Positions 15,690 to 59,596 of a stretch of 64,000 nt of DNA are shown in pieces; the first letter of the stretch is position 1; each line of letters opens with the position of its first letter. Origin of the DNA: Haliotis rubra (Eukaryota); NCBI RefSeq assembly GCF_003918875.1, contig NW_025767134.1:744001-808000 (forward strand), read 5' to 3'. A program made the position numbers and the translations under genes. The notes under the pieces are model-generated. The model had not been told where the DNA came from. It was given only the letters and a program-made list of their open reading frames with translations, and did no database searches.

Positions 15690-17716
15690 TTAAACTGGAG
15701 AATCTCGGGATGTTTCTACAACTGCTGCTGTGATATACTTCACATGGACATTCGTCACATCACACGTTTGTCCAAATAAAGTTACTGAATCTAAACTTGA
15801 CTCATTTTCTGTGTTTCTGTATTTTGCAAAAAGAAACTCAGATTCACTGTCCGAATGCGACCTTTGAACAGTTGTTTCGTCTGGTTTGTTTGGCTTCCCA
15901 AGGTCACAAGAAGCTGCTCGCCGTGCACTACAGGGAGTACTCCCAACCGGCCTCAACAAGATCTTGCAGTGTCCAGTTTTATCTTCGGTAGTTTTCCTGT
16001 GCTTCTCGTACGTACTTCTTGCCATCACGTCATTGTTCGGAGCCTGTTGTAAGATTCTTCCCCGGTTATCTTCTAAGGCGCCGGTTTCGTCCATGGCAGA
16101 TGTCCTTGCCTCTGTAGCTGAGTCTATGTCTTCATCCTGGATCTCCCAGTACTTGTTGTACACAGTAGACCCGCTGTATCCGCCACCATCTACATCACGT
16201 CCTCTTGCAGATCTTCTCTCAAAAAGTCGTCTCCAGTTCCATATAGGCCTGAAAAAGCAAGTCCAGCACTTAAACAGGAAATGAAGATTAAATCTTTTTC
16301 ATTATTAATTATTTTTATTATCATGTTTCTAATTACTGCCAACTGTACCTTTGATTGAGTCTGATAAGCTTTGAACATCGATTGTACAATATTAATGCAA
16401 ATGTTCCGAACAGAAGTGTTCCAAAGACAGCACACACAAGCTTTAGGGTCTCATTTGATTCTTTTTGCACATTCGGAATGGAGGTTGAACCTGAAAGAAA
16501 ACAATCAAGGACATATTTGAATTCCATATTAATACTTCTGTATAGTGAGTGGTTGTGTGAGTATGGAGCCCTTAAACAAGATAATAATTCGAGTCATATG
16601 AGGGTTAACTGCGAGGAAAACCATGTTTTAGACAGCCACTTAAAACCAACGAGCTTGAGCATGGCGCTAACACATTGAGAAACATAATCTGGACGCATTG
16701 GGACTTGAACCCGGGATCATAGGTTTCTGGATTACCCAATGGGCGCAACTCTCCCCAGCGAATTGCGGCGCTTTATATGATTAGACGATTGGGCCATCCG
16801 TTCCCATTATACTGTCTCTCTGAAGTCTCTCTGCTTCACACGGGTACACTGTATGAAGCCCATTTCTGGTGTCCCCCCACCGTGATATTGCTGGAATATT
16901 GCTTAAAGCGGCGTAAAACAAAACTCACTCACTCACTCACTGAAGTCTCTCTGAAGTCAAGAAGTTACATAAACTACAGTGTCTTTATTCTTCTTTACTT
17001 TCCAGATTGATTGTACTACATTAGCAACTGAGACAACTAGCAGGATCCTTATCCAATTATAACTGGAACAATATTTTTATAATAGACACCTGTTGATGGG
17101 GTAAGTACATCCTTGCATGCCTGGCACACCTTACACGGTTGTGTTGGTGTACTGCAGCTGTCACAGTGGAGCGGGCATCCATGTTGACAGTTTACACCAT
17201 AATAGATTCCGTCAGAGCAGAGCTGTTTACATCCCTCTGTATTGGCACAATTCACACACAGCGGACATTTTACACCACAGTAGTCGCCCCTCCAACCAGT
17301 CCGACAACCGTTACACGTGCCCGACTGTCTATCACAGCCATTAATGCAGTTTGCTGGACATTTGTGACAGTTCTTTCCATAAAAGTTGTATTTGCATTGA
17401 CCAAAACAGGTACCATTGTAACGGAAACAGTTCAGGCAGCCTATTGGACAATCCACTCCACAATTATCTCCCTTCTTGCCTGCTACACAGCCATCTTTAC
17501 ACACGACACGGGTGTTGGTAACCTGACAGCGAGAGTTGAGACAGGTGTCTGGACAGTCGTTCTGGCACTGTGTTCCATAGAACCTGGAGTCCTGACACTG
17601 GTCACACTCACCTGATGACGTCACCGAAACACATCGAGGTAGACACAAGCCCTTAACACAACTCACGTTGTTGCCGCCACAGTCAGAGCAAGACGTCCCG
17701 AACGGATATGGTGTAC
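15690..17716 (-). CDS. Gene B: EGF-repeat type-I receptor with YWEI/CDL tail (most divergent tail)
   Basis: Exons 17716-17090 (EGF, 627 bp, phase 1-1), 16490-16349 (TM LVCAVFGTLLFGTFALILY), 16248-15690 (YNKYWEIQDEDIDS ... DSVTLFGQTCDVTNVHVKYIT). Leader exon not found. Confidence 0.85.
16835..16941 (+). mobile_element. SINE family 1, 3' half
   Basis: gaagcccatttctggtgtcccc..gctggaatattgct..gcggcgtaaaac(actc)n. Confidence 0.8.
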
Positions 17717-19094
17717 CTGAACAAACAATAGCATGACGAAATCAAACAGAAAATATAACTGTGTAATATCGCAAAAACCGGAAAGCCAAAGAAAATGACG
17801 ACTGTGCAAATCTAATAGGATAGTCTTATGGTTTCTCCTGTAAATCGGTCATGATAGGTAAAACAATTTCTCCATAATGCAAATAGCAACAGTGACTTAT
17901 GAAACAGGTCATACAGTAAACTAAGGATGGAAACGTAAGTGGCCTGGATGAAAACTGGTAAAATGAACTCCCCTATTGCCGAGGTGTTAAATTAGTCAAT
18001 AATTTATTTGCATATTTGTTACTGGTTCGAATCCGGATTTCAACCTAACGATGATCTGTATCTTGCAAACCGAACTACAGATGCGTGACTGAAGGACGTC
18101 AAACTTCAGCTTCTAATTAACACTGATCGGGACCCCCATGTTATTACTGTCATAGTTTTGACTTTATACACCGTTTGTAAGGGCTAGGTGACTTTACATA
18201 CCTTGATGCGTAGCAACAATGAAGACCAATACCGTTTGTAGCATGCTGCGTACATTGACGTAACGTTTAGCGATGCCACGGGTCAGACCCTTTCGGTTTG
18301 TCATGTCTGTAATAAACAAAATATCTTTTTCTGGAAGTTGCATGAGAAAACCGATATAGGTCATCTTACAGCTCCACTTTACTCGCATCGTTCAGGAGGA
18401 GATAACATGCACCCAGCTTTACCTTTAGGTATTCAATCGTAACAGCGTGTTCTCATTGTCTCCGGGTTTCTTATTTCACTAGAAAAAACAAAACACAGAT
18501 ACAAGGAAATTAAATCTACACAAAATGTTATTTTCACAAATGGTGTCGATTTCCTTCAAGAAGTGTGCCGTGTTTGTTAATTAGATATAGATGTCAGCAA
18601 AAGTCCTTCAAAAAGAATGCATGCCTGATAAGGGTTGATTTAATTGATTATGTTTCAGAAAATATTTATATAAAGTACACATTATGTCATCTGTATACCA
18701 TAACCATGTGAGTAACAGGCAGTTTTCAGAATAAGTTATGCGACAAAATATCAGCTATTTGGGTATGGTGATATACGTAAATGAACGACCTACCATACAC
18801 CTTCATCTGCAGTCACACAGGCCACATCCGGAGCTGCCACCATATCACCCCACGGTCACGGTCAGAACCGCATTGTTTAAACAAAACAGGAGGCAGGGGG
18901 CGACCAGTCTTCGACGTCGCCGGAAGTCACTAGATATGCATTGGTATCTAAGGTCGTCCAGGATCCTGCAATTGTTGGTTCGAATCCAGTAACTTAATTA
19001 TGACCCTTGGCTTGTCATCACAATACAATAGTCCAGGGATGGCATCGAAGTGTTACACATATAAGTGGTCTAACATCTGAGTCATTCACCAACA

Positions 19095-22009: not shown

Positions 22010-23246
22010 ATGCCAAGATTGTCACCAGAGGAACGAGAACGGGCGTTGGGCATGTTGCAGGTTGGCCCTGATCAAGCAGATCAAGCAATGATCAAGCAGG
22101 ATCATTGCCAGACGATTTGGTTGCCATCATTCCACCATCATAAGACTTGCCAACTGGTACCAACAAACAGGAACCACCAGGGACCGCCAACGTCCTGGCC
22201 AGGCACGGGTCACCACCACTCGCCAAGATCGAGACATTGTTCGGCGCCATATTCGGGATCGTACGTTGCCGGCAAAACTAATGCTTAGTCTCTGAATATA
22301 TATAATTTTGATAGTAACAAACAAGCCCATGTAAATTGAAAAGGAGCCCCAGGGAGACCAGAGCCTGAGGAAATCTAGACTTGCTTTATTTAGGGCTTTA
22401 GCACTGCAGAGAGGGCTTGGCAGTGGGGAAAATAATGTGGTTCAGGGACTGTGAGACAGACTAGTTGCCGGCTGCCAGAACCGCAAACGCTGTCCAAGGC
22501 CGACGTGGTTTGATCAGTGCTTCCACCGTGCGGCAGGATTACGGTGTCGACGCCCTTTTGTTGGACCCATCCTGACTGATAGACATCGCGGTGAACGCCA
22601 ACGATGAGCTGAACAGCATCGTTTGTGGTTGTTACGACGTTGGCATGCTGTTGTGTTCTCCGACGAGTCACGTTTTCACTTGCGAAAAGCTGACGGGCAT
22701 CTACGGGTATGGCGTCGACGGGTAGAACGTTACCATCAGGACTGTGTTGTGCAAACAGATCGGTGGGGTGGAGACAGCATTATGGTGTGTGTGTGTGTGT
22801 GTGGGGTTTGTTGGGTCAGTTATCATCACAAAACCGCTCTGGTAGTTTGTCGTGGCAGAGTGAATGCCCTTTACTACCGTGACACCATTCTTCAGAACAA
22901 CGTCGTTCCCTTCTTTAACCAACATCAAGATCGGCACACATTCCAGCAGGACAATGCTCGAGCGCACACTGCACGTGTTGCAACACAGTTTCTGGCAAAC
23001 AACAACATTCCTCTACTTCCATGACCTGCATTGTCACCGGATTTGTCTCCCATTGAACACGTGTGGGATTACATCGGCCAACGCCTCTCACGTCGCCCAC
23101 AGATCAACAACCTTGGGGAACTTGAGAATGCCTTGCACCAAGAGTGGAATGCATTGCCTCAAAACACTTTTCAGAGACTTATCAGTTTAATGAGGAGACG
23201 TTGCACAGCTTGTGTTGCTGCCAACGGTGGTCATACACGTTACTGA
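22010..23246 (+). mobile_element. Tc1-family transposase pseudogene (DD34E type)
   Basis: MPRLSPEERERALGML, FSDESRF, FQQDNARAHTA, SPDLSPIEHVW, NGGHTRY*. Disrupted by frameshifts, a stop, a (GT)n expansion and a nested insertion. Confidence 0.92.
22274..22463 (+). mobile_element. ~190-bp element nested inside the Tc1 transposase
   Basis: 9-bp TSD gttgccggc (22265-22273 / 22464-22472); second copy at 12570-12760. Confidence 0.8.
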
Positions 23247-24406: not shown

Positions 24407-27400
24407 CTAACATCCACTTTCTGTATCAGTTTTGTCAGGAGAAAGATAACTGACATTCACACTAGCTAAGTCACAGTTTTGTTCAATGAATATTATCGAA
24501 TCAGTCTTTTGGATCAATTGCATGTCTGATGGTAAGAAGTCATCGGAAATGTCAGAACTCGTCAGAGAACCTTTCCCAGAGGCAGATGACCGTGGAATCA
24601 ACGCGTTATCTTCGTGTATTACTGGATAGTCCACACCACCAGTTGCCTCTTCTGGTTTACCCATCACACGTTCGTAACCTTCATACACACAATCAGAACG
24701 TACGTCTTGATGGCGGAGGTTGGGAGAACCCCCATTGTTGTGCTGGGTTGGGCGTCGGCTGGCTACGTCTTGCGGTGTTTCGTACGGGTGTTTTACGGTA
24801 GGCCGTTTTACAGACTGATCGGAATCCAAGTCATTGTCATATATTTCCCAGTACTTCTTGGTCCAGTAGTCACCGTCGCTCTGTCTTGTCCCATTGGAAC
24901 TGTGTCGCTGATTCTCATAGCGCAGAGATGATGAGAAGATCGCTCTGCAACACAATGCCGTTGTTTTATCAGTACAGAAAACTACGGTCATACGCAGCTC
25001 GACTAAAATGTACAACAAGTTGGCAGCAAGCTCGTTATAAGACTATTCGGTAGTTCACTGTATATCTTTCAGGCCAACAATAAATAAAACACTGCTAATG
25101 CAAATTAAAACCAAAGACGTCACCGAAAATTATTTACTACATATGTCGTTATCGATACTTTATCATTCTGACCATGATGTGAGACCTTAATTCCCATCCA
25201 CAAAAAACGTAATACGCATCAAAAGATCAATATTTCATATTGCTAGTAATACTGGCAGATGGATTAAATAATTCGAGATTTACCTTTCTCGATTTAGTTT
25301 CATGTGCCTTATCCCTGCAAATGCTCCACACATTAGCGCCATGGCAGCCAGCAGACCACATATAATCTTGAGTGTGAGATGAGCATCTTCTGGAAAATAC
25401 AGAATGTGAATGTGCACTTCACGAGGTGGCTAGTTCATTAATCTGGGGAAACAAATACACCTGTAATCTCCTATCTCATTACATTATGGAATTAATTCTT
25501 CTTAGACGGAGGGGCGGTGGGGTAGTCTAGTGGTTAAAGCGTTGGCTCGTCACGCCGAAGACCCGGGTTCGAATCCCCACATGGGTACAATGTGTGAAGC
25601 CCATTTCTGGTGTCCCCCGCCGTGATATTGCTGGAATATTGCTAAAAGCGGCGTAATACCAAACTGAGTCAGTCTTCTTAGACGGTACAATCATATACTA
25701 CGGCCATTCATCGTTATATCGAGCTTTGGTGTGTCGATCTAAAAGCTTGGTCTATTTCTTCCTTAATCACCATTTCCGGGTGTGTCGAATGTCGGATAAC
25801 TCGAAGTATTCACCTAGGTCCCTTTAACTTTGACGCAACGGTTTTTGACAGTTTGGCATTTTCAAGCAGACACGAATGGTATTCATTTTGATAACAAATA
25901 ATAATAGTAAGAATAAACAGTTAAAGACGACAGCGGTATAAAACTGCAAAACGACATACCTAGCATCTGAGCTGCCATACTTACCTGTGTTTTTGTCCAT
26001 ACATGGCGTGGTGTGGCAGTCTGTACCAGTGCACTTTGTGCAGAGTTCGTGGCAGTAGGTTCTCTTGTAGTGAGACGCACAGTTGAGACAAATCCCCGTT
26101 TCTTTGTTGCATCCATCACATCCTACAGGGCATGGTGCTGAACAGTCCTCTCCATAATGGTCATCGTGTGGACAAGGTCCGATACACACATCACCATAAC
26201 GCTGACACAGTGAACAGTTTGATGGACAGGTTCCATTGCAGTAGTCTCCCCTGTAACCTGCTATACAGTTGACACACTTCCCTGTGCGGCTGTCACAGCC
26301 TCCAGTGCAGTAGTCTGGGCATGGAAACTGGCAGGAGAGGCCATAGTACTGGGAGTCTGAACACTGGCCTATACATGCAACTCCGTAACGTTCACAGTGG
26401 GTACATGTAGGGGGACAGAGGGCATTGCAGTACTTGCCCCTCACACCTGACCGGCATCTGCTGCACTCCTCCATGTCTTCAACACATCCCCCTGGGGACA
26501 GAGCACAGTGTAATAATGAAGGTCTATGGATCAGTGTGCACTCCATTTACATGGTTGTTTGTGAGGCTGGAAGGCTACTGGTCACAATTACCATAATATT
26601 CTGCCGGGTTCCAATTCATACTGCTTAGAAACCATTTAAAATCAATTATATGTAATAATATACGATAGAAACAATATTTACTCCACGAACACTTTATGTA
26701 TGACGACAGTTTAATGCAATATACGATTTGAAATAAATAAGAATACTATTATATCATTTCACAAATTGGTTCATTCAGTGACTAATTAATAACGTTAATT
26801 TGAAATTGGAAGATCATAATAATTCGAGGAGTAAACATATACTACAATCAACGGCAGAGTAATTTCAAAGATTGCATAAATGTGACCGGAAGCGAAACGG
26901 TTTTGTTGTATCTGATCCTGAAAATTACAAATAAACTGTCGAAATCACTGATGCCCAGACACCTGTTATTAAAATTCACTTTCCTTTCTCACAATGGTGG
27001 TTTGTCGTCTTGTAATATCAGTGATTTCGACTTGTTATCGTTTCTTTTGAGCGTTAGTTTAGTTTGCCATCTTATTTACCTGATGTACATAGTCCGGACT
27101 GGCATGTGGCATTGCAGAACGTCCCTCTTTTACCTCGCTCACAGCTGTAGCAATACCCGGTGTCTTTCTCACATCCACCCACACAGCTGATGGGGCAGTG
27201 TTCCTTACAGTACTTTCCCCTGTGTCCTTCCTCGCAACTGTCACACTCCCCAGTTTCCTTATCACATCCCTCTCTACAGTTGGAGGGACATGACTTCCGA
27301 CAGTTGAGTCCATAGTAGTGGGGATTGGAACACGGTCCTACACAACCATCACCGTAACGTTCACACTCTGTACAACCTGATGGGCAGGCTATTACACAGT

Positions 27401-32157: not shown

Positions 32158-34927
32158 TTACTTAGTCATGTTGTCAGACTGAATGGCAACTTTTCCGGGT
32201 GTGAGATATCGCACATACACTTGTGACAAGTCGCAGTTTCGCTCTATTGATACGATTGAATTGGTCTTCCTGACCAATCGTTGTGTGTTAGTGGATAAGC
32301 AGCTAAGACTGATATTACACCTATCATGGACCAGTTTCTTCCTTGATTCAAACAAGTCCGAAAGTGAGGAAGACTTCCACAAAAAAGGATGGTGAACTTC
32401 TCTACCATCAGATGCATTGTCAGGTTCATCGTCTTCTGTCAGGTTCGCCTTTGGATTCATGTCCAGTCCACCATGCTTGAAACAGGAGTCACGAGTTTCC
32501 TTTACCCAGTTGGATCTTGTTTCAGACTGCATGACCAGTGGGACAGAGGGAGGAGGTTGTTGAGCAGTGGACATTTCCTTCCTTATGACGTCATTTTCAT
32601 TAACATTGGTCACTGTGTGTCCATTGAGAGACAAAATGCTTACATACGAATTGATATCTGTGTCTTTATCGTGTATTTCCCAGTAGTTCTGTGCCCAATA
32701 ATCACGGCCATCGCGGTTGGTACCATTCCTCTCGTTCACTGTGGATTTGGTGGTCTTTCTGTAAAATACACACACTTGTACACTTAGAATCGTGATATAA
32801 CAATAGGCATTATCCGTCTTTAGATCTTCTATTTTACGTAATTGTCAATTATCATTAGACGTTGGTATGAATATAGATTGATAATATATACATAGGTAAA
32901 ATATTTGAAATAAATGTTTTAACCGTCTCTATTTGACATAAATCGTTACCTTTTTCGGCATTGGGCCTTTCGTCTTGCAAGATTGACCACAACACATGTT
33001 GATCCAATAAGTACAACCACGCCCAGAATTCCTGCAATAACCTGTAGCGTGTGGTATGTGTATCCTGGATAAAGATCAAAACACATGATGGACAAATATG
33101 TTAGTTTATATAAGAGTAATGGTAAATCTTGTATAAAAAGTAAATGTTAGGGTAGCTCTTTTTTAGTTAAAGAACCCGTGAAGATTCGGGTTAGATTGGC
33201 CTTCAGTTACCCATGCTTGTTGTAAGAGGCGACTAACGGGATCGGATGGTTAGGCTCACTGACTTGGTTAACACGTGTCTTCGTATCCTAATTGCGTACA
33301 TCGATGTTCATGATGTTGATCACTGGATTCTCTGGTCCAGACTCGATTATTTACAGACCGCCGCCATATAGCTGGAATATTGCTGAGTGCGGCGTTAAAC
33401 CACAATCAATCAATCAATCTTGAGTCAAAGGGAGAGGCAGATGCATTTCATACGTTCACAACGCAAAATTGGAAATATGAAACCAAGTCGGTTATTGTTT
33501 CCTTGTTTTATAACCAGCTGATCTGAAATTGGATCAGCTGTGACTATAAATGGAATGTTCAAATAATTATGATAAGCATATGATAATCATAAAGCTGGTG
33601 ATGTGTTCAATACATATTACTATACTTTACAGTCTGAATGATCTAGTAATACATTTTACCGTTATATATATAATAAAATAAACTACTTACGTGTCCCACA
33701 GGTGTGTTGTGACAGTTGTCGCCTATACAGTGGAAGCAGTGTCCGTCACAGTAGAGGAACTGAGGCCCGCATCTGAGACACATCTCTTCACTACTGACAG
33801 ATGAATAAAACACATTCATTAAATTTATAGACGATCTATAGATGTACACGTTTATAAGTTAAAAGTCGCCTTAGGTGGCGTATTCTTTATAAATTTATTT
33901 TATATATGATCCCTTGTAGAATGAATGCTGCGCCCTTGATCAACTGTTTAATATGTTCGTCAATGCTATTCAAAAGAAGTATAATTTAAATGAGTAAAAG
34001 ATACATATAATCTATACAGTACCTTCCTATGTGATCAGAGTCACATCTGTCACACTCCCCTGTTTCTTTGTCACACCCATCTGTACATATGGAAGGACAT
34101 TTCGTCCTACACATGGGACCGTGAAACCGAGGATTCTGACATGGACCCACGCAGTCAACACCAAAACGTTCACACTGTGTACAGGCAGCATCACAGTTCA
34201 CTCCACAGTTATCTCCCTTCTTGCCGGCCACACATCCCTCTGCACACGCAACACGGGTGTTGTTTATCTGACAGCGAGAGTTGAGACAGGTGTCTGGACA
34301 GTCATGTTCACAGTGTTTACCATAGAAGCTGGAGTCCAGACACTGGAGACACTGTCCCGATGACGTCACGCTGACACAACGAGGTAGACACACACCGTCA
34401 ACACAGGTCACGTTGTTACCGTCACAGTTGGTGCAAGGTGTATTCGAAGAAATAGCTAGTGCTGCAGTGAGACCCAAATCTATATTCAGACTCAAGCCCA
34501 AACAATGTTAAACAGTCCATGCATTTATACGCATTTAAACGATTCCTTCAGTTCAGCAGAAGACAAGAGCTCTAAAGGTTTGTAAATTCGATATGTATTC
34601 ATATTGGGTTTTCTGTCACATTTCAGTAAACAGATTCCCTGCAAAATATGCAATAAATAATAAAAATCTCACTACACATAAACCACTTTAAAACTTCAAT
34701 GATGTCTCCAGAATTTCAGGATATTTTCCTGCATTGTATCCCACAGCAAACAACACACACAATCGCGGTGTTTTACTACCATGTGTCCATACATTGTAGA
34801 AACATATACCCTGTTTGGAGTTTTCGATAATACCAAAGCAATTAACCAGACGAGCATACCCGATTTACTATGTTGCAACAAAATACATACCTGTTTCGAA
34901 AAGCAGCAACTTCGCTAGAACCAGCAT
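32158..34927 (-). CDS. Gene D: EGF-repeat receptor with YWEI/CDL tail; probable 1-bp deletion before the TM exon
   Basis: Leader 34927-34891 (MLVLAKLLLFET), EGF 34461-34005, small Cys exon 33793-33691 (ends phase 0 as written; one extra base at ~33700 would give TPCG and phase 1), TM 33064-32950 (VIAGILGVVVLIGSTCVVVNL), tail 32758-32158 (DYWAQNYWEIHDKD ... LVRKTNSIVSIERNCDLSQVYVRYLTPGK). Confidence 0.8.
33172..33418 (+). mobile_element. SINE family 2 copy
   Basis: cccatgcttgttgtaagaggcgactaacggg core, gctggaatattgctgagtgcggcgttaaac end, (CAAT)n tail. Confidence 0.85.
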
Positions 34928-36149
34928 GACTGACGTGAACCTTGTCTCACAACTATTTTGTGACACGGGCGGGCCTTCAGTATCATGAAACTAATGACAG
35001 GGAAGTTTCAATGTTAATACAATTAATTACGAGTTTGGCAGTCCAGATTTACTACCGAACAGTATGTGTTGATATTTTGTGTACCTATGAATGTTCAGCA
35101 TACATTGACCTTCCTGAATTTTGTGTTCACATTAACAATCATATTCTTATATTCATGATACATATACCTGCATGTCTGTAGGTTTTTGTGGGGCAAACAA
35201 TAATTAGTATTCAACCTATGTGATAATACTATTTGAAGCTTTTTTCAATAAATTTACTCAAAACCCAGCACCGAAAACAAGCACATACAAAAAACAAAAT
35301 CAAGTAGCAATTCATGTATTGTGAATTCAGCATCATGTTGTAGGAACAATATTCCCCACACCTGACCTCATTACGTAAATCAAGGACATACATGCATGTA
35401 TGCATGTCAGTTCTATTCAGACGCTTCTCAGTTTACACTACCATCATGAGCATACATTGTACAACAAAACAAATACTAGCTTCCGGTTATTCGGTTAAAT
35501 GCTATGTCCTGTTTTGTGTGTTATTACACTTTTGGAAATGTATCGCGACTGTTTGATGAGGAATATATATCGACATTTGTGTGCATATGATGCTTTTATC
35601 TATTTCCGAAATTCTTTATGTAAACAATATAAATACATTTATTACAAAATCGCATGTCGCATGATTTAACTACAAGGAAACTGTAACTGAAAAAGAAACA
35701 CAGAAATGATTATGTCCTGAAGCTATTGTTTTAAATTATTCAACAAAAGCCAAAGGACAATGATCGTTTTTCAATGTCGATGTATTTTGTTTTAAACCAA
35801 AACTTATCCATTGTACCCCTGTGTCAGCTGTATGTGAAATCTGTACAGGAATGAAACTACATCTCTGCTACTGGTGTGTTACGGTGAATATTGGTACATA
35901 AAATTAGATAATGAATTATTGTAATAATTGATGCTCTTTTTTGTGTAGATATCATGTTCAAAGCGTACATTTTCGCCACGGTTAATTGATTTCTGTGCCC
36001 CCGATTTTCCTCCCGTGTTTCTTGACGTCTGTACAAGCCAAGCTGCCTGTGAACATTACTAGTAACGTTATAATCTCATCCTACCTATACGTATTATACC
36101 TATTTAATGCCAACTGACACCACTTTAATGCCAACTGATACCACTTCAA

Positions 36150-36385
36150 TGAAAATCAGGGTTAGAATTCAGCAACCCATACTTAGCGACTAACAGGATG
36201 GGGTGGTCTCTCTCGCTGACACGGTTGGCACATGTAATTGTATACATGTACCAACAATTATTGTGTAGGTCGATGCTCAGGTTGTTGATCACTGGATTGT
36301 CTGGTCCCAGCTCGATTATTTACAGACCGCTGCCATACAGTTGGAATACTGCTGAGTGCGGCGTTAAACAACAAACAAACCAAAC
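36150..36385 (+). mobile_element. SINE family 2 copy
   Basis: Aligns to 33172-33418, with an (AAAC)n tail. Confidence 0.8.
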
Positions 36386-36689
36386 ATCAGAATGGTTAAG
36401 TGTGGGACTGGGGGAAACCCTAGAAACCCCCTAGAATCCAGCGGCTCAGTACGGTTCATTACAAATGTCATAGTTCTTGCTCCTCAACTTCAGTGTTCTG
36501 AGAGAAAAGGTTTCTTGATTATTTTGTAAGCTCACCATGAACTAGAATCTCTATTTTACTTGAAAAGTGCAATATTAGGTATAACACGTGCTATATTTTA
36601 GACACTGATGCCAAGATTCTATCCAAACACACTGTATTGTACATTGGCTGAGCACATAACATTATGCTAATGGTTAATATTACATAGCA

Positions 36690-36808
36690 CATGATGCTGT
36701 TGTTCACTGGATTGTCTCGTCTAGACTCGATTATTTACAGACCGCCGCCATATAGCTGGAATAGTGCTGAGTGCGGTGTAAAACTAAACACACTCACTCA
36801 CTCACCCA
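36690..36808 (+). mobile_element. SINE family 2, 3' fragment
   Basis: cactggattgtct..agactcgattatttacagaccgccgccatatagctggaat. Confidence 0.8.
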
Positions 36809-37006
36809 CAGCACATGAAGTGCTGGCTCAGGTCAGAGATCTCTCCATCCATGGAATACATGATAATAGAAGGGTTGAAAATTACATCAAAATGAACAAA
36901 ACGAGGATGTGATTACATTTTTATTTTCTACTCTATATGTGTACATTCCAATCGTTTTTCTGTACATTGTAAAAGATAAAGGGCAATGATTTACATGCCA
37001 GATGAT

Positions 37007-40000
37007 TTAAGTTTGGGACTTTGGCGTGAGGTATTTGACGCTGACTTTTGACAAGTCGCAGTTTTTCTCAATGAAGAGAACTGAATCAGTCTTTTCAATC
37101 AACCTTTTTGTGTCGAGTGACATCTGACAATAATCAATATCAGTTTCACTTTTAGCTGAGGCAAGAATTGAATCGTCCCCATTATTCAGTACTGAAGACT
37201 CAGTAAAAGGGAACAAGCCATCATCATTATCATCGTGGTACTTCACAGTTGGACGTGCTTCACAAAACGAAGCAGACATATCTAATCCCGCCCCAGTGTC
37301 AGACCCATGACATGTTTCAGTATTGGGAGTCCCTGGATCAGGGTTTACGTTTTGGTCCTCTATTGTATTGGATTCATGCTGTTCCTGTTCCGATTCTGCT
37401 GTTCTCCCAGCAGCCGTGTCTGCTGTAGCAACTGAACATGAACTACGCGCAGAAGGACGAGATGCTTGTTCTGCACGTTGATCGGAGTTGACATCCTGTT
37501 CATTTATTTCCCAGTATCTGTGAGTCCAGTAATCGCCACAGTTGCATCGACGTGTTGTGTCAGTTCGGCAGGAGGCAGGAACCTGACTGGCAAAGACAAA
37601 CACAGAATGTATTTACTACTAGTTTCCTACTCTTGTATCACAAATGGCTGATAAACACATTGAAAGAATTTATATAAAGCTTCGATGACACATGCCTAAT
37701 GATAAACCTATACCAATCGCGACTGAATACTTGACAATATACCATAATGTATATTCAATTCTAGCTTATCATCTGCATTGAAATCTGAGAAAGGCTAGAT
37801 AATCCAAAGAAGGACACGGAAATCACCATGTTAAGGTATAGAGTATGTGGTACAATTGAATTGTGTTAATTGACACGCCGTTGCAAAGAGGTATATACGT
37901 TTACCAATCTGACTACATATCTGCTATACTTACCTACTGCGGCATCGATAACGCTTCATCAGCACTGATACAGCTGCAGCCAAACCTAGCAGCACCACCA
38001 CAACCAGCACGCCGCTGACGATTTTCGTGGTCAGCCTCGGGTCACCTATAACGACATGCATACATGATAACACAAAAGTAAACGTTTAGCAAAGATTTAC
38101 TAATAAATTGAAAACATAGAACAAAACTTTGATGCGTTCATAAAACTTTTCATATTATTTAGAAAGTTGCTATCGCATTAATTTGATTGAGCAGACAAAA
38201 CATTGAACGTGCCCTTACATAATTACCAATTAACTCATGACTAGAAAGCATAACAATGTTCCAGCCGCTTTTATACAGGAATTCAGATGTCTTATCTCAT
38301 TTACAAGTAATTTTATTGCCGGTTATACGTTCATCATATGACCGAAACTAAATTATGTACTCAGAAAACATTTCTGAGGAAAACAAAACTAGTATAAACA
38401 AGGTATGTTTGCCTTGATTACACGCTCCATCCTCACAACGAAGCTTGCAGTATCTTCCTCTGTAACCAGGTTTACAGTTGATGCAGTCGCCTGTCAGTCT
38501 GTAACAGCCACCAATGCAGTTGACTGGACAGTCACGGTGGCAGGCTTCCCCATAGGACCTGCGATCTGTACATGGCTCCACGCAATCATCAGCTAAACGC
38601 TTACACTCTGTGCAGTTTACTGGACAGGAAATATTACAAAATGTGCCTCTATATCCGGGCACACAACTATCACACACCCCTGTTAATTTACCACAAACCT
38701 CTCTGCAGTTAGATGGACACGAGTGATTACAATATTGACCGTAATTCCAGATATTTAGACATCGTCCTATACACTTATTCCCATGGCGTTCGCATGCTGT
38801 ACATAAGGCAGGGCAGTTAATGTTACAGTACTTCCCACGGTACCCTGTCTGGCATGTGTCACAGTGCTCCCCACTGTACCAGGGTTTGCAGCTGTGACAC
38901 ACGCCTGTGTTCTGGTCACACCCATCTCTACACCCAGAGGGGCATACTTCGGTGCAGCTGTTTCCCATGTAACCCTCAGAACAGGTGTTGCATCGCCCTG
39001 TGCTTTTATTGCAACCATTCTTGCAGTCCTCGGGACATGTTGTTTCACATTTGGGACCAAAATACCCAGGGTTCAAACATGGACCTATGCATTCATCCCC
39101 AAAGCAGTGTGTACAAGATGGCGGGCAGTCTACACCACAGTTGTCTCCCCTCTTCCCAGTCACACACCCCTCTGTACAAACGACACGTGAATTGTTCATC
39201 TGACAGCGAGAGTTGCGACATGTGTCTGGACAGACATGTTCACACTGAACACCATGAAATCGGATGTCACGACACATAAGACACTCTCCAGATGACGTCA
39301 CGTTGACACAGCGAGGCACACAGACACCGTCGGCACAGGTCACGTTGTTGCTGTTACAGGCGGAGCACGGTGAAGGACCTTGGACAACAGTGATAAATAC
39401 TGACGCTTTGCATTATGAATGAATAGGTTCTGCTGGTATTGTTGAAACATGTTTGAGCTCAGTATAATAACAATGACTACAAATTGCCAAAGATAGTACC
39501 ATAATCTGATTAAGTAATCTCGTATTTTACCATTTTAAAATTATATGTATATGTTCCTTTCTGTTCAGTAGTAATCATTGTTTACTTGTAGTATTCATGA
39601 TATTTTTCTTCGTTCATCATAACATATTTGAGTTGAGAACAAACCTGTTACAATGGGTACCATGCATATAGCCGCCATCACACAGAACACCGGGGGTCGC
39701 AATACCAGAAAGAAAGGCACCATATTCCTACATGGAAATACAGTAATACACATCATGAAGTAACAGAACCATCTATGGTCGTGATATATCAAGCAATAAT
39801 GACACAATGATCATTTGTTCCAATACTGGTTTGCGTGGATTACGTTTACTATACCAAAGCTCGTTGGTTTCCAAACAAACCTATAGTATTATAGTATTTG
39901 TTACCTCTATTCAAAAACAACTGTCCTGATCACATACGAGGATGCGAATATCAACAGCAATCAGACGTGTTGCTTTTACAATTGTATTTGTAACTTGAAT

Positions 40001-40332
40001 GCAATACATTGAATATACAAGCCCTCATGATGATGATTATTATTATGAGCATAACTTAAAATTACCTTTATGAATCCGATGTGTCCGACAGTTTTCAACT
40101 AGTTACCTCCACAAGTGGGCAGTCGTCTTCTTAACAAACTAGTTGCATGTTACATGTCCTCCTTCAAACCAACAAAACAAACATTATGAGGAAACGGTAA
40201 CTGCAGCCAATATCACTGATTGTTATGAAAGGCGTGTCTTCGTTTAAATAGACACGTACTTAATCTTGAGGAATCCCTGGAGCCCCGAGATGTATGTTGA
40301 CTACCTGCATAGCAAGCACACATATGACTCAT
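37007..40332 (-). CDS. Gene E: EGF-repeat receptor with longest single EGF exon and YWEI/CDL tail
   Basis: Leader 40332-40305 (MSHMCACYA, continuing ASVFITVVQG), EGF 39405-38413 (993 bp; donor would be GC, CAAG|gcaaac), TM 38045-37934 (IVSGVLVVVVLLGLAAAVSVLM), tail 37586-37007 (DYWTHRYWEINEQDVNS ... LIEKTDSVLFIEKNCDLSKVSVKYLTPK). Confidence 0.85.
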
Positions 40333-41755
40333 CGGAGCTGCGTTATATTCCCCGTCATCCACGAGTATTTGACCTTCATTGCAAGGAAATTTGAACTATA
40401 ATTTACATCGTGACTAATGATGTTATATACTGAACCAAAACAGAAACTTCATACTTGGAGAACTTAATTATATTGAAATGAGTAGTACAAGGTAGTACAA
40501 GGTAAATATGACGAATATTATAATGCCAGATCCAATCTGACGCATCTGACCATTTCAACTATGGAGAACCACGCGGGGTGCATGCAGCGCAGCACGTTTG
40601 CGGAGTCACGTGAACACAAATTCATGTACCTAAAATTATTATGGGGAACATTAAACGGTACTGAACAAGTGACAGTACAGATGGCTAGTCCCTGTGAAAT
40701 CAAAATGTCACCCATCGTGCTACTGTTGTCTATGGATGAGGCACCAAGGGCAACTTCATGCCTAATCCTGTTCAGTGTACGCTCATTACATCCATACACC
40801 ACACTGATCCACAAACTTTGTTCTATATGTGTATGTTCGAGACATAAAGTAACACATGTGAAGTCTATTTGATATAGTATATCTCATGTTCTACGAATGT
40901 AAATGTCATCCTGGCAATAATTAATTGTAATTGTAATTGTAATTGTAATTAATCTTTCAAGCTAGATCAGGAAATTGGATGACTAAGTTGTCTACAGGAT
41001 CACAATTCACTGTCCAGAGTTGCTTCCCTTGCCCACTCCGGAAACCTTTGATCATGAGTTCGAATCTTGTTCGTCACTTTAGATCTTAAACCCACACTGG
41101 GTTTACAAGCCATGATATGGCTGGGAAAATGTTAAACCCTACTCACGTACTCATTCACTCAAGTAGATAAAAATACATTTATATTATAAAAACAACAAAT
41201 GTTGGAATATTAATACTGCGCTGCTTTGTTTACATGCTACTTTCGAACCTCTAGATTTGAAGTTAATCGCCCAAACTCTTCACCATGACGTCATATGATA
41301 GACTAAGTTTGGTAAAGACTGAAATTCATGTATATGTATGTTTCACGGGTTTTCATTTTCCTCGTAGATGTGAAGGTACGTGTAAGTTGTCATGTGTGCA
41401 TGTTAAAAAAACTACATGTGAAAACAACTGTGACATTGCTTCGTAACAGCTCAAAAGGAACCTTATTGCGCCTATAAATATGAGAATGAAATTAGGTTTG
41501 TCTCGAACATATACGCGCGACAAAGGGCTATTTTTGGAAGTGTTTCGAAATATATATTGCATACCCACAATTTAAGATCAAGGAATGGAGAAATTAATCT
41601 ATGTTGTTATTTGAAGATCCCATATTCAGTACACCTCACATATGAAAATACATACCAGCATATCACAAAGAAAGCTTTATTGTGGAATATGGATATACAC
41701 AGAACAAGCACTTTTTTTAACAACTAAAATGGTTTCATGGACATTTTTTCACCAA

Positions 41756-55050: not shown

Positions 55051-56172
55051 AGACAGACATATTTATTTGTATATGTGGCCTTGAGGCCAATAGTACATGT
55101 GTACAATAATAGCAGTGCATTTATGCGCAACCTGTAAATACGCGAGTTATAGGAACATAAATAAATCCATAAACACCCATTCACAATTTACATTTTTTCT
55201 CTCAACATAAGTATGTGGTACAACACAAGGGCTAGCTTAAACAACAAGTCAATGTTTTCTGTGCGAAGTAGCATACAGAATTTATGTCTCGACGGTTGGT
55301 TATAGAAAAAATAAGGCAAATATGTTTCTCTTATTTTCTAAATATTTCGGGCATACAAGTAATACATGGTACTCATCTTCTTGCGATAAATTGCAGAATG
55401 GACATTGGATATCTATTGCATTTGAAGTTTTGGCAAATCGCGCCGCTTGGACTTTGAAGTTGTAAGCGTTACATCTAAATTTAGTAAGCGTACGCTTAAG
55501 TTGTGGTGATTTAATCTTTGAAAGGTAAATTTCTGTATTAATACAATATTTATATTCTGAATAAAAGTTGACACAGGTTGACGACGTTATTTCATTATAC
55601 CAGTCCTGTTGATAAATGTCTTTGCATCTCTGCTTGAATAATTTGATGAAATATTGTGTATTACTTACATTTTGGGCGATCCATACATTTCCAAAGCCAT
55701 GACTAAAAATAATAGTTCTAACGAATGAAACCCAATTAATATCTCCGGTATCATCTAGTGTTTTAAGCATCTTGAATATCGTGAAATTGGTTGTCTCATC
55801 AATCTTAGCCAATATGCAATAACCCGACATCGGGCGTTAATAAACAGTGGAAAACGTCCACATTCAGCTAAAATAACCTTATTCGCAGTTCTGTAGCCAA
55901 CACGCAACAAGAACTTACAGAACTTTGAATGTACCTTTTCAATATTCTTGTTTATGTTAATGCCCCATATTTCAGAGCCGTACAACAGAATTGGTTGAAT
56001 TTTTCCATCAAACAGTTTAAATGATGCATGGATCGGTAATTCTTTATATTTGCATATGAATTTCTTTATGACATGTAGGGCTCGTTCAGCTTGCATAGAT
56101 AATGTTTCACAGGCTCTGGAGAATATATTTCTACACGAAAATATAATACCTAAATATTTGTAATATGACACC
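55051..56172 (-). mobile_element. 5'-truncated non-LTR retrotransposon (LINE ORF2 C-terminus; RTE-X-like by motif, inferred)
   Basis: YKYLGIIF..LFDGKIQPILLYGSEIWG..AECGRFPL and Zn-knuckle CPFC..EDEYHVLLVCPKY, with one frameshift. 14-bp TSD acacatgtgaagtc (55037-55050 / 56173-56186); empty site at ~40852-40865. Confidence 0.92.
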
Positions 56173-57096
56173 ACACATGTGAAGTCTATTTGATATAGTA
56201 TATCTCATGTTCTACGAATGTAAATGTTATCCCGGCAATAATTACTTGCAATTGTAATTGTAATTATATTTAATCTTTCAAGCTAGATCAGGAGATTGGA
56301 TGACCAAGTTGTCTACGGGATCACAATTCACTGTCCAGAGTTGCTTCCCTTGCCCACTCCGTGACCTTTGATCACGAGTTCGAATCTTGTTCGTCACTTC
56401 AGACTTTAAACCCACACTGGGCTTACAAGCCATGATATAGCTGGGAAAATGTTAAACCCTACTCACGTGCTCATTCACTCAAGTAGATGAAAGTACATTT
56501 ATGTTATAAAAACAACAAATGTTGGAATATTATTACTGCGCTGCTTTGTTTACATGCTACTTTCCAACCTCTAGATGTGAGGTTATTTCCCTAAACTCTT
56601 CACCATGATGTCATATGATAGTGTGGTAAAGACTGAAATGCATGTATATATATGTTTCACGGGTTTTCATTTTCTTGTAGATGTGAAGGTAAGTGTAAGC
56701 TGTCATGTGTGCATGTAAAAATTCTACATGTTGAAACAACTGTGACATTGCCTCGTAACAGCTCAAAAGGAACCTTATTTTGCCTATAAATAGGAAAATG
56801 AAATTAGGTTTGTCTCGAACAGTTACGCGCGGCAAATGGATATTTTCGGAAGTGTTTCTGATTATAACAGAAATATATCTTACATACTCACAATCTGAGA
56901 TCAAGGAATTGAGAAATTAATCTCTGTTGCTATTTGAAGATCCCATATTCAATCCACCTCACATATGAAAATACATACCAGCATATCACAAATTCGGTGT
57001 ATGAAAACGAAAGCTTTATTGTGCAATATGGATATACACAGAACAAGCACTATTTTTTGAACAACTAAAATGGTTTCATGGACATTTTTTCACCAA

Positions 57097-59596
57097 TTAC
57101 AATGTATTTGAAGCGGTGTTGACTTTGTCAGGTGTAAGATATTTCACATTGACACTTGCTAAATCAAGATGTTGTTCTATAGCTATTATAGAATCCGTCT
57201 TTCTAATGAGATTCTCAATACGCTGTTGAACTGGATTGTCGATGACTCCATCCCCTTCCTGATAAGTCTGTAGATCGGAGTTACTGACAGTCAAACCTAT
57301 TATGTTCCTCTCTGATGCATCATCTACCTCACTGTCCACCACGTCCACCTCTGGCGTTTCTGCAACAAGCGGTTCATAAGTCGAATCATGTCCACATTGA
57401 TGGACCAAAGCCACGTGATCTGCCGATGACATTGCACCATCAAACCTTGGAACTGATGTTCTGACTTTTACATTGTCCAAGGGGATATCCTTGTTTTGGA
57501 CAGGGCGTCTATTGGGTATCTGAGGCACAGGTAAGTTGTTACAGTCAGATTCAGATCCCAAATCCTTATCGTGGATGTCCCAGTACTTGTGTGCCCAGTA
57601 CTCACTACCATCACTCTGTCCCAGATCCTGAGGACTGGGAAATGGTTCCCTTCTGTGAAGAAAAGGACTGTTTAGTTCATGTTAAATTGAATATACACAT
57701 GTATATATATTGAACATATAGCTGTATCTATATAAAATGTTGTTATTTCAAGCATACCACATAGCATTTGAAATATGTGTAAACAGATTCAATTCTCAAA
57801 TTTCAGATTTACATTATATTTGTGTCTGCATATGAGGAAACAAGAATCTGTGACTAGGGAAGTTCTCTGCACTATTTTTTCCTATATGATTCTGCTGGTA
57901 CATGAACATTCTCACCTATTCTGACATTTGCTCTTGCGTCTGGTTAGAATGACCACAGCTAAGGTTGTTCCAAGCGTCACAAGCACTGCCAGTACTCCAG
58001 CTGTCACTTTCAGGGTCAATATAGTGTTACCTGCAGTGAAAAACATGCATCGTAAATGATGGTTGGAGCGAAAAGCCTAGAGGTTGAAGTTTTCATTCGT
58101 CATGCAGAAAGTCCAGTTTCGAATTCCCCAAACCGACACAACGTCTTTGCAAATTACGCTGTGCTCTTCCTCTAATATTGCTAAAAGCGACGTGCTAAAA
58201 GCGTCCGATGTATTTTTTACTCTTTAAAGGAAAGGTTCAATATTGTTCTCATCGTATGCCTAACCTTTGAAACAGGAACACTTTGTAAATAGTATATTGT
58301 ACATCATGTCAGACTCATCTATATTAACACACTCATCAATATTAACAAAGATACTATATAGTGGACAGTGGCAGTAATATTTCAAATAGGTTCAGGCCGT
58401 TGTATTTTTATATGCATTAATTTATCTTGCTACATATTAGGCTAATACTTTTACAGATACCTTCATATCATATGTCTTATGAACATGTCTGATATTTGGT
58501 AGAAGCTCGTGTGTACAAGTCACCTGAGTCACAGGCACCTCTTTGACAGAGACCGTCCGTACACCTCGTGTATCCATCGGCACAGAGAATACATCTCCCC
58601 GTGGTCTTGTCGCATCCAGCACAACTTGCAGGGCATTGTATTGAGCAGAAAGGACCGTAGTACTGGCTGTCTGGACATGATCCTATACATTGCCCACTAT
58701 GTTGTTCACACTGAGTACAGTTGGAGGGGCACGTTTCATTACAGTACGTCCCCGTGTAACCTGCCACGCAGCTACCACAGTCACCCTTGTCTTTATCACA
58801 TACATCTTGGCAGTAAGGAGAACAGGCAATATTACAGTACATTCCCCTGTTGCCTTCCACACATCTGTCACAGTACTCCCCACTGTAACCCTCAACGCAA
58901 CTTCTGCATTTGCCCGTGGCTTTCTTACAACCATCCAAACAGTTATCAGGACATGGGGTTTCACATTGTGAACCGTAATACTGGTCGTTTTGACATGATC
59001 CAATACAAGCATCTCCTGTTTGTTCACATCTTGTGCAAGATGAAGGACACAGAGATGCACAATTTTCCTTTCTTACCATCCACACATCCATCTGAACAAA
59101 CGGTACGGGTGTTGTTCATCTGACAGCGAGAGTTGAGACAGGTGTCTGGACAGTCATGTTCACACTGTTTACCGTAGAACCTGGAGTCCAGACACTGGAG
59201 ACACTCTCCAGATGACGTTAAATGGACGCAGCGTAGTAGACACACGCCATTGTCACAGGTAACGTTGTTACCGTTACACTCGTTACACGGCGTTGTTGAT
59301 GATGCAACTGCAGTTACAGTGAAAACATATTTACAAAAGAGAATAATCTTAGTACTAAAGGAAACACATCGTACAGCATAATGGCACAGTATAATTGAAT
59401 AAAACTGTTTGGAATGTACTTACTGCTATAAATAAAAACTTCATGATAAACTATTTCACAAAATTATCGAGTGATTGAGCGATCATGTTCTGGTGGTATG
59501 CGAAACTCTATTTGTTTACCAACCTGCTGGGGTACATGACAGCAGGATTACAAGTGTTGACATCAGGACTACCCAGAATGTCGTGCTTTTCTGCAT
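57097..59596 (-). pseudogene. Gene F': duplicate of F with 2-bp deletion in the EGF exon
   Basis: Leader 59596-59524, EGF 59307-58524 (784 bp; AAAGGAAAATTGT vs AAAGGAGAAAATTGT in F, ~59066), TM 58030-57916, tail 57652-57097. Confidence 0.85.

What the first reader, a model, noticed from the sequence alone, without database searches (positions are those of the whole stretch)
15690..57652. Unrecognised bipartite cytoplasmic signature (YWxxxYWEIxDxD ... LIxKTDSIxxIExNCDLxxVxVxYLTP) conserved across all non-PTP members
Seen in sequence, block 1 / block 2. B: YNKYWEIQDEDI / DSVTLFGQTCDVTNVHVKYITA. C: DYWTKKYWEIYDNDL / LIQKTDSIIFIEQNCDLASVNVSYLSP. D: DYWAQNYWEIHDKDT / LVRKTNSIVSIERNCDLSQVYVRYLTP. 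E: DYWTHRYWEINEQDV / LIEKTDSVLFIEKNCDLSKVSVKYLTP. F and F': YWAHKYWDIHDKDL / LIRKTDSIIAIEQHLDLASVNVKYLTP. G: DYWTHKYWEIHDRDI / LIKKTDSIIFIEQNCDLSNVTATYLCP. The ~90-130 aa linker between the blocks is unalignable and polar. Two constrained islands in one otherwise free exon imply purifying selection on binding surfaces. Inference: the blocks either co-fold into a small split domain or dock two partners; the terminal YxxP fits Crk/Nck/Abl-type SH2 preference. It is not a canonical ITAM or ITIM.
Basis: seen in the sequence. Interest (0 to 1): 0.85.

Follow-up and report, generated by a model that had tools for sequence, protein, structure and literature searches.

The report
Two-tyrosine tail motif of abalone receptors
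A cluster of abalone-only cell-surface receptor genes has two short, strongly conserved motifs, each centred on a tyrosine, in an otherwise fast-evolving and disordered intracellular tail. They are most likely docking sites for signalling or sorting proteins, and sister genes in the same cluster carry a tyrosine phosphatase instead of this tail.

Summary
The window is Haliotis rubra (blacklip abalone). Seven minus-strand tandem genes (B, C, D, E, F, G, F') encode type I receptors rich in EGF repeats. In each, the last exon encodes the whole cytoplasmic tail, and both blocks are present.

- **Selection:** over six ortholog pairs the blocks have dN/dS 0.15 (CI 0.09-0.24) and the linker 0.58 (0.47-0.72). 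dS is the same in both, so the constraint acts on the protein.
- **Known domains:** the tails gave no Pfam, PDB-sequence or ESM Atlas match. An exhaustive profile search of 1.84 billion proteins found only Haliotis proteins.
- **Invariant residues:** across 28 tails only the two tyrosines are (near-)invariant. They sit in Y-W-E-I plus an acidic/Ser cluster, and in V-x-V-x-Y-(L/I/V)-x-(P/T/A).
the YxxP reading holds in 19 of 28 tails. ITAM, ITIM and NPxY are absent.
- **Fold:** two AlphaFold runs gave no compact fold (pTM 0.21-0.23). Each block also degenerates on its own in some lineages. Two separate docking motifs in a disordered tail fit better than a split domain.
- **Expression:** spliced RNA contigs show that D and E are transcribed.
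- **Context:** the ligand-side head exon of the phosphatase gene A is nearly identical to those of tail genes G and D (dS 0.02-0.10), which suggests a paired-receptor arrangement.

Another first-stage note on this same stretch also proposed paired receptors.

The parts
15690..16250 (-). Gene B last exon (cytoplasmic tail, stop included). Block 1 at 16128-16166, block 2 at 15726-15806 (degenerate). Tyr codons 16149-16151 and 15735-15737.
   Evidence: identical to the RefSeq model P0005
24407..24946 (-). Gene C last exon (tail). Block 1 at 24830-24868, block 2 at 24437-24517. Tyr codons 24851-24853 and 24446-24448.
   Evidence: H. rufescens orthologue P0006/L001
32158..32760 (-). Gene D last exon (tail). 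Block 1 at 32662-32700, block 2 at 32197-32277. Tyr codons 32683-32685 and 32206-32208.
   Evidence: RNA contigs cover 32259-32760 and one ends at 32760
37007..37588 (-). Gene E last exon (tail). Block 1 at 37493-37531, block 2 at 37022-37102. Tyr codons 37514-37516 and 37031-37033.
   Evidence: spliced RNA contigs in four runs join 37586 to 37934
37934..38047 (-). Gene E transmembrane exon, joined by splicing to the tail exon (the intron 37587-37933 reads GT..AG on the minus strand).
41756..42310 (-). Gene F last exon (tail). Block 1 at 42221-42259, block 2 at 41789-41869.
49790..50302 (-). Gene G last exon (tail). Block 1 at 50180-50218, block 2 at 49814-49894.
   Evidence: AlphaFold model of this tail
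57097..57651 (-). Gene F' last exon (tail). Block 1 at 57562-57600, block 2 at 57130-57210. F' is a recent copy of F.
   Evidence: RefSeq model P0001
32949..33146 (-). Open stretch holding the gene D transmembrane exon (approximate). The equivalents are F 42555-42716, G 50550-50672, F' 57915-58076, C about 25270-25400 and B about 16351-16476.
2507..9521 (-). Gene A, the phosphatase member. EGF head exons at 8319-9521, TM exon near 6517, juxtamembrane exon at 5940-6227, PTP exons including 3538-3819 and 2507-2920. It has neither block.
   Evidence: product P0027 has one complete PF00102 domain, E 2e-82
52061..52593 (-). Gene G head (N-terminal ectodomain) exon segment, 95.5% identical in DNA to gene A 8968-9500.
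33989..34507 (-). Gene D head exon; dS 0.08 to gene A and 0.10 to gene G over the first 80 codons.

Best explanation
The signature is real and acts at the protein level.

Shown:
- Seven tandem Haliotis-specific type I receptors have an EGF-repeat ectodomain, one TM helix and a cytoplasmic tail of 170-200 residues encoded by the last exon.
- The tail is predicted to be mostly disordered and evolves fast, apart from two constrained islands, each built around a (near-)invariant tyrosine.
- Island 1 lies 30-60 residues from the membrane. It reads (D-Y-W-x-x-K)-Y-W-E-I followed by an acidic/serine cluster (x-D-x-D-x-x-S-D/E).
- Island 2 lies at the C-terminus. It is a helix-prone L-I-x-K-T-D-S-I-I-F-I-E-Q-N-C-D-L followed by V-x-V-x-Y-(L/I/V)-x-(P/T/A), 7-16 residues from the end.

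Inferred:
- The islands are two separate linear docking motifs that fold on binding, not halves of one domain.
- Most probably both tyrosines are phosphorylated by a Src-type kinase after ligand-driven clustering.
- They would then recruit SH2/PTB proteins: Y-x-E-I resembles the Src-family optimum pYEEI, and Y-(L/I/V)-x-P resembles PLC-gamma/Crk-type sites.
- Single-domain receptor phosphatases encoded in the same array carry a near-identical, gene-converted ligand-binding head. They would be brought to the same ligand and oppose this phosphorylation.
For: - **Anatomy:** blocks, TM exons and acceptor sites; RefSeq models agree with the splicing.
- **Expression:** spliced RNA contigs join the E TM exon to its tail exon in four runs and cover the D tail.
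- **Selection:** pooled omega 0.15 for blocks and 0.58 for linker, with equal dS. Synonymous sites of the blocks are saturated between paralogues.
- **Tyrosines:** in the 28-tail alignment they are the best-conserved columns (28/28 and 27/28). In three tails they are the only tyrosines.
- **Disorder and no common fold:**
- **Independent decay of the blocks:** P0053/P0051 keep block 1 but lose the helix part of block 2. The P0009/P0034 lineage loses the first half of block 1 but keeps block 2.
- **Phosphatase context:** gene A has a complete classical PTP domain. About 20 PTP paralogues share the same N-terminal module, which (a search that can only see close relatives) found only in Haliotis.
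- **Shared head:** A-G head exon dS 0.02, A-D 0.08, D-G 0.10, against an orthologue dS of about 0.45. PTP and tail types are interleaved in the head tree.
Against: - No phosphorylation, kinase or binding partner is shown. The motif-to-SH2 assignments rest on textbook vertebrate specificities.
- W at +1 of Y-W-E-I and the T/A variants at +3 of the terminal motif do not match any optimal SH2 motif.
- Y-x-x-I plus an acidic/Ser cluster equally fits a clathrin-adaptor sorting signal.
- AlphaFold used shallow, single-genus alignments. It cannot exclude a fold that forms only in a dimer or with a partner.
- I could not inspect inter-block contacts in the models.
- RNA evidence comes from one study and from contigs only.
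- The head tree is poorly resolved: 14 of 22 inner branches are open.
Confidence: 0.55

Rival explanations
1. Trafficking signals rather than phosphotyrosine signalling. Block 1 is a YxxPhi endocytic motif (bound by the AP-2 mu2 subunit) with a CK2-type acidic/serine cluster, as in furin-like sorting signals. Block 2 is a C-terminal sorting or retention element. The receptors would be endocytic scavenger-type receptors.
For: - Y-x-x-(I/L) is present in 27 of 28 tails and is followed by a D-x-D...S-(D/E) cluster.
- The ectodomain is of the multi-EGF, scavenger-receptor-like kind.
- The motif sits well away from the membrane in a disordered tail.
Against: - The terminal Y-(L/I/V)-x-(P/T/A) is not a YxxPhi motif, yet it holds the only fully invariant residue.
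- The co-clustered, head-sharing tyrosine phosphatases are unexplained by a pure sorting role.
- The two readings are not exclusive: one tyrosine can serve both, as in CTLA-4.
Confidence: 0.25
2. The two blocks co-fold, alone or in a receptor dimer, into a small split domain, with the linker looping out.
For: - Both blocks are retained together in most lineages.
- Block 2 holds runs of beta-branched hydrophobic residues typical of buried structure.
- AlphaFold gives both blocks higher confidence (65-79) than the rest of the tail.
Against: - pTM is 0.21-0.23 and there is no sheet or packed core. Block 1 has no secondary structure.
- Linker length varies from about 60 to 135 residues.
- Each block degenerates without the other in some lineages.
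- 40 residues is marginal for an autonomous fold.
Confidence: 0.1
3. The islands are not protein-function constraints. They would reflect a nucleotide-level element (splicing enhancer, antisense transcript, regulatory DNA), recent gene conversion, or an assembly artefact.
For: - Gene conversion does occur in this array, in the head exons.
- F and F' are recent copies.
Against: - dS in the blocks equals dS in the linker, and only dN is depressed.
- Block synonymous sites are saturated between paralogues.
- The same blocks occur in independent assemblies of four species.
- No gap touches a tail exon.
Confidence: 0.02

Closest known systems
CED-1 / Draper / MEGF10 / Jedi-1 (PEAR1) engulfment receptors
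   Same: These are type I receptors with many EGF/laminin-type EGF repeats, one TM helix and a disordered tail that signals through short tyrosine motifs (NPxY for PTB adaptors; YxxL or an ITAM for SH2 kinases). RefSeq names the abalone genes after them.
   Different: - No EMI domain is detected.
- NPxY is absent in 0 of 28 tails and there is no conserved ITAM spacing.
- The two motifs here are different sequences 60-135 residues apart.
- The tail is known only in Haliotis.
The abalone genes work in a similar way but are not shown to be members.
Vertebrate paired immune receptors (KIR, SIRP, PILR, Ly49 and similar)
   Same: Both are tandem clusters in which near-identical ligand-binding heads, kept alike by gene conversion, are joined to opposite signalling tails. 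Here the heads of A (PTP), G and D have dS 0.02-0.10 while their tails are unrelated.
   Different: - The opposing arm here would be a catalytic receptor phosphatase itself, not an ITIM that recruits SHP phosphatases.
- The heads are EGF repeats, not Ig or lectin domains.
- Opposite signalling and a shared ligand are not shown.
Biomphalaria sudanica SudRes1 cluster of MEGF-domain receptor phosphatases and other MEGF genes (PMC12297450)
   Same: It is a gastropod gene cluster that mixes receptor-like PTPs carrying multi-EGF ectodomains with paralogous MEGF genes lacking a PTP. The cluster shows presence/absence variation and is proposed to act in pathogen recognition.
   Different: - Those RPTPs also have a galactose-binding domain and tandem PTP domains. 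Gene A here has one PTP domain and no such domain detected.
- The bipartite tail was not found outside Haliotis by the profile search.
Scavenger receptors class F (SCARF1/SREC-I, SCARF2)
   Same: They have EGF-repeat ectodomains, a single TM helix and a long low-complexity cytoplasmic tail. RefSeq uses the name for several members.
   Different: SREC tails are Ser/Pro-rich and have no equivalent of the two blocks (from general knowledge). The only sequence link is the weak EGF_laminin signal.

Membership tests
Any curated protein domain (Pfam-A) | Tail scores above threshold against a Pfam model | tested here: not met
   Six tail exons and six full-length proteins gave no tail hit at E<=1. A PDB-sequence profile search gave 0 hits at E<=10.
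ITAM | YxxL/I, 6-12 residues, YxxL/I | tested here: not met
   The pattern occurs in 3 of 28 tails and not at conserved columns. The two conserved tyrosines are about 80-150 residues apart.
ITIM / ITSM | (S/I/V/L)xYxx(I/V/L) or TxYxx(V/I) at the conserved tyrosines | tested here: not met
   ITIM pattern in 4 of 28 tails and ITSM in 2 of 28. Block 1 has H/K/R/N/T at -2. The terminal motif has P/T/A at +3.
CED-1/Draper/MEGF10 family | NPxY motif in the tail | tested here: not met
   0 of 28 tails
CED-1/Draper/MEGF10 family | N-terminal EMI domain before the EGF repeats | tested here: not met
   No EMI hit at E<=1 in six full-length proteins; only weak EGF_laminin. Pfam may miss a divergent EMI.
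Crk/Nck/Abl-type SH2 site | Y-x-x-P at the conserved C-terminal tyrosine | tested here: inconclusive
   Pro at +3 in 19 of 28 tails and T or A in nine. Binding cannot be tested with these tools.
Src-family-type SH2 site / YxxPhi sorting signal | Y-x-(E/D)-I or Y-x-x-bulky hydrophobic at the conserved proximal tyrosine | tested here: met
   Y-(W/S/Y)-(E/D/V)-I in 27 of 28 tails; F-F-D-M in P0040. Only the sequence pattern is met; phosphorylation and binding were not tested.
Short linear motifs in a disordered region | Short constrained islands inside a low-confidence, fast-evolving region | tested here: met
   Islands of 13 and 27 residues. Linker pLDDT is below 50. Omega is 0.15 for the islands and 0.58 for the linker.
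Classical receptor protein tyrosine phosphatase (gene A) | Complete PTP domain with the C(X)5R signature | tested here: met
   PF00102 at E 2e-82 over positions 1-233 of 234. The HC(X)5R(S/T) pattern is present in all PTP paralogues.
Paired receptors | Near-identical ligand-binding domains on genes with different signalling tails in one cluster | tested here: met
   A (PTP) vs G: 96.7% DNA identity and dS 0.02 over 80 codons. The similarity is limited to the exon.
Paired receptors | The two tails give opposite signals on the same ligand | not testable with these tools
   Needs ligand identification and signalling assays.

The most novel reading that the evidence does not exclude
This would be an invertebrate paired-receptor system with a new wiring. 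The activating arm is a family of EGF-repeat receptors that signal through a genus-specific two-tyrosine tail. The inhibitory arm is a set of receptor tyrosine phosphatases. Gene conversion keeps their ligand-binding heads the same as those of the tail receptors, so that both arms see the same (possibly pathogen-derived) ligand and set a phosphotyrosine threshold directly.
Probability: 0.25. Interest if true: 0.75.

Novelty: new variant of a known kind. Interest (0 to 1): 0.5.

Why it matters
- **For annotation:** abalone genome annotations name these genes after MEGF10, CED-1, PEAR1 or SREC, yet their tails lack the motifs that define those receptors. They carry a distinct, strongly selected pair of tyrosine motifs instead. 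This gives a concrete handle (two tyrosines, two peptides) for finding the signalling partners of a large, clustered, fast-evolving receptor family in a farmed mollusc that suffers from infectious disease.
- **For immune biology:** head exons shared with receptor phosphatases would, if function follows, show that the paired activating/inhibitory receptor logic arose independently in molluscs, with the phosphatase built into the receptor.
- **For a published locus:** it also gives a mechanistic frame for the similar MEGF-RPTP cluster linked to schistosome resistance in Biomphalaria (PMC12297450).

Tried and rejected
- **Known-domain searches, all empty:** Pfam on tails and full-length proteins gave nothing for the tail. 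The PDB-sequence profile search gave nothing. The ESM Atlas feature search gave no usable hit or a best score of 0.77, in the range that shuffled sequences reach.
- **Word-index homology search with a tail exon alone:** no hit. This was expected, because only proteins of similar length are candidates.
- **P0008, a 3555-residue hit of the profile search with 31 matched stretches:** it is a translated tandem repeat that happens to contain E-K-T-N-S-I-V. Rejected as spurious.
- **H. asinina DNA for more ortholog pairs:** not on record. H. rufescens and H. cracherodii were used instead.
- **Structure searches:** not run, because both models had pTM of only 0.21-0.23 and matches would be meaningless.
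- **Literature on abalone MEGF/SREC/RPTP families:** nothing specific.
- **Dileucine, Grb2 (YxN), p85 (YxxM) and hemITAM patterns:** not conserved.
- **Mobile-element ORFs:** one gave a sub-threshold DDE_3 match (22608-23021). The ORFs of the insertion near F' gave nothing convincing.
- **Caveat on range:** the first profile, built from 7 sequences, did not return the divergent members P0053, P0051 and P0040 among its hits. Still more divergent relatives outside Haliotis could have been missed. Unannotated vetigastropod genomes were not searchable here.

Full report
**What is there.** The window is Haliotis rubra. Proteins encoded in it are identical to RefSeq models on a 927,956-bp scaffold. 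On the minus strand lies a tandem array, in order of transcription: F' (57.1-59.4 kb), G (49.8-52.6), F (41.8-44.0), E (37.0-39.4), D (32.2-34.5), C (24.4-27.6), B (15.7-17.7) and A (2.5-9.5).

Each gene has one or more large exons of Cys-rich EGF/laminin-EGF-like repeats, with only a weak EGF_laminin signal in Pfam. A small exon encodes a single transmembrane helix. A last exon encodes the whole cytoplasmic part.

In A that part is a juxtamembrane stretch plus one complete classical PTP domain (PF00102, E 2e-82). The acceptor sites before the tail exons are canonical.

**Gaps.** The three N runs named by the scan's program (45585-45794, 47766-47986, 47994-48365) lie between gene F and gene G. 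Nothing in this report is read across them, and I made no attempt to fill them. They may hide the first exon of F. The F/F' duplicated segment aligns right up to 45584.

**Is it more than chance?** I fetched the orthologous loci of H. rufescens (L001-L003) and H. cracherodii (L004) and aligned the tail exons codon by codon.

| Region | dN | dS | omega | 95% CI |
|---|---|---|---|---|
| Blocks | 0.067 | 0.448 | 0.15 | 0.09-0.24 |
| Linker | 0.283 | 0.491 | 0.58 | 0.47-0.72 |

- Blocks reached the linker omega in none of 2000 bootstraps.
- The non-synonymous difference is highly significant (Fisher p = 4e-22) and the synonymous one is not (p = 0.76).
- Every single pair shows the same direction: 0.06-0.24 for blocks against 0.46-0.93 for linker.
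- The recent copies F and F' show 0 non-synonymous changes in the blocks and 7 in the linker.
- Between paralogues in the window the synonymous sites of the blocks are saturated (pS 0.62-0.98), while amino-acid identity is 60-75% among C-G.

The constraint is therefore on the protein, it is old, and it is not made by gene conversion.

**Expression.** Contigs of four runs from one study join the E transmembrane exon (38047-37934) to the tail exon at 37586. The skipped piece reads GT..AG on the minus strand. The contigs also cover the D tail exon up to its acceptor at 32760. Because the contigs are spliced, these runs contain RNA.

Their variants relative to the window fall mostly in the linker. 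In E, 13 of 16 lie outside the blocks and 8 of those are non-synonymous. The three in block 2 are two synonymous changes and one V-to-F seen in a single run.

**How wide is the family?** A profile of the seven tails was scored against 1.84 billion representative proteins. It returned 11 hits. Ten are Haliotis proteins (rubra, rufescens, cracherodii, asinina). The eleventh is a translated satellite repeat and is spurious.

A search with the N-terminal ectodomain module also found only Haliotis proteins. About 20 have a PTP domain and about 15 have no Pfam domain in the cytoplasmic part. Most of the latter carry the blocks.

Aligning 28 tails from at least 11 paralogue lineages shows what is really conserved:
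- The terminal tyrosine (28/28) and the block 1 tyrosine (27/28; Phe in the most divergent member).
- Then Ile at +3 of block 1, and the Ser and Glu of T-D-S-I-I-F-I-E.

In three tails these two are the only tyrosines.

P0053/P0051 keep block 1 but retain only V-R-Y-L-T-T of block 2. The P0009/P0015/P0034 lineage has lost the D-Y-W half of block 1 but keeps block 2 fully. P0040 has both in degenerate form. The two islands therefore evolve as separable modules.

**Known motifs and domains.** The tails gave no Pfam, PDB-sequence or Atlas match. Conserved ITAM, ITIM, ITSM, NPxY, YxN, YxxM and hemITAM patterns are absent. YxxP at the terminal tyrosine holds in 19 of 28 tails. Y-x-x-(I/L) at the proximal tyrosine holds in 27 of 28.

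**Fold.** AlphaFold2 was run on the G tail (17-sequence alignment) and on the shortest tail, P0034 (28 sequences).

| Model | Mean pLDDT | pTM |
|---|---|---|
| G tail | 53 | 0.23 |
| P0034 tail | 56 | 0.21 |

In both, the linker has pLDDT below 50. There is one helix over L-I-x-K-T-D-S-I-I-F-I-E-Q-N (pLDDT 63-79), and block 1 has moderate confidence without secondary structure. Nothing suggests a compact split domain. The alignments are shallow, however, and I could not inspect contacts.

**Context that bears on mechanism.**
- Over the first 80 codons of the head exon, A (PTP) vs G gives dS 0.02, A vs D gives 0.08 and D vs G gives 0.10. Orthologues between species give about 0.45, and the tails of the same genes are saturated.
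- The A-G similarity (95.5% over 533 bp) stops at the exon borders.
- In a tree of the head module from four species, PTP and tail genes are interleaved: 6 changes, not clearly fewer than shuffled labels. The tree is poorly resolved.

Gene conversion or exon exchange thus keeps the heads of phosphatase genes and tail genes alike while the cytoplasmic parts stay distinct.

**Most likely mechanism.** Shown: there are two constrained, tyrosine-centred islands in a disordered, expressed tail, and head-sharing receptor phosphatases sit in the same array.

Inferred from textbook specificities of SH2 domains and adaptors: the islands are two independent docking motifs. Y-W-E-I plus the acidic/serine cluster resembles the Src-family pYEEI optimum and also a YxxPhi/acidic-cluster sorting signal. 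The C-terminal helix plus V-x-V-x-Y-(L/I/V)-x-(P/T/A) resembles PLC-gamma- or Crk-type sites only loosely. I favour phosphotyrosine docking opposed in trans by the RPTP paralogues (about 0.55). The sorting-signal reading is the main rival (about 0.25), and the two are not exclusive. The split-domain reading is about 0.1.

**Comparison with what is known.** The receptors work like CED-1/Draper/MEGF10/Jedi-1, with EGF repeats and tyrosine motifs in a disordered tail. They fail that family's tested defining features: no NPxY, no EMI detected and no ITAM.

The cluster architecture resembles vertebrate paired receptors and the Biomphalaria SudRes1 MEGF-RPTP cluster. I found no paper describing this abalone family or its tail.

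A first-stage note on this same stretch (s1-352081) also proposes a paired-receptor system.

**Verdict.** This is a real, previously undescribed, genus-restricted pair of cytoplasmic motifs, best classed as a new variant of a known kind (tyrosine-based docking motifs of multi-EGF receptors). Interest is moderate. It would rise if the paired arrangement with receptor phosphatases is functional.

Noticed in passing
window 8968-9500 vs 52061-52593; also 33989-34507: The N-terminal ectodomain (head) exons of the phosphatase gene A and tail genes G and D are nearly identical: A-G is 95.5% identical in DNA with dS 0.02, A-D has dS 0.08 and D-G has dS 0.10. Their cytoplasmic exons are unrelated or saturated. 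This indicates recent gene conversion or exon exchange limited to the exon.
   Followed up: partly
window 39554-45584 vs 53683-60945: This is a segmental duplication carrying F and F' at 86-95% identity. The F' copy has a 1.1-kb insertion at 55050-56173 holding two ORFs of unclear type. The F copy runs right up to the assembly gap at 45585. H. rufescens shows no F' copy within 10 kb upstream of its G orthologue.
   Followed up: partly
window about 59027-59115: The EGF exon of F' changes reading frame within an A-rich run (G-K-K-G-E-N in F). RefSeq accordingly models only a 228-residue product that starts in the TM exon. This is either a young pseudogene or a homopolymer error in the assembly.
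   Followed up: no
window 8259-8680 vs 9040-9459; 51664-52041 vs 52061-52593: The head module is duplicated internally within gene A (95.8% identity) and within gene G.
   Followed up: no
window 33101-33500, 36101-36500, 36701-36900; also 16784-16928, 25530-25697: Short interspersed repeats lie in introns and intergenic DNA of the array. Their summed contig depth in the RNA runs is in the thousands, against 3-7 for the receptor exons. Copies in B, C and D share a translated word (A-L-S-N-I-P-A-I-S).
   Followed up: no
window 22608-23021 (+), 6958-7412 (+): These ORF remnants look like Tc1/mariner-type transposase. Only a sub-threshold DDE_3 match (E 0.0017) was obtained for 22608-23021, and none for 6958-7412.
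   Followed up: partly
protein P0008 (ENA metagenome contig, 61.4 kb): This 3555-residue predicted 'protein' is a translated tandem repeat. It scored E 3e-19 against the tail profile through 31 weak repeats of E-K-T-N-S-I-V. It is a reminder that summed repeat hits can look significant.
   Followed up: yes
window 1-368: TG/CA-rich low-complexity DNA at the window start gives long spurious ORFs on the minus strand.
   Followed up: no
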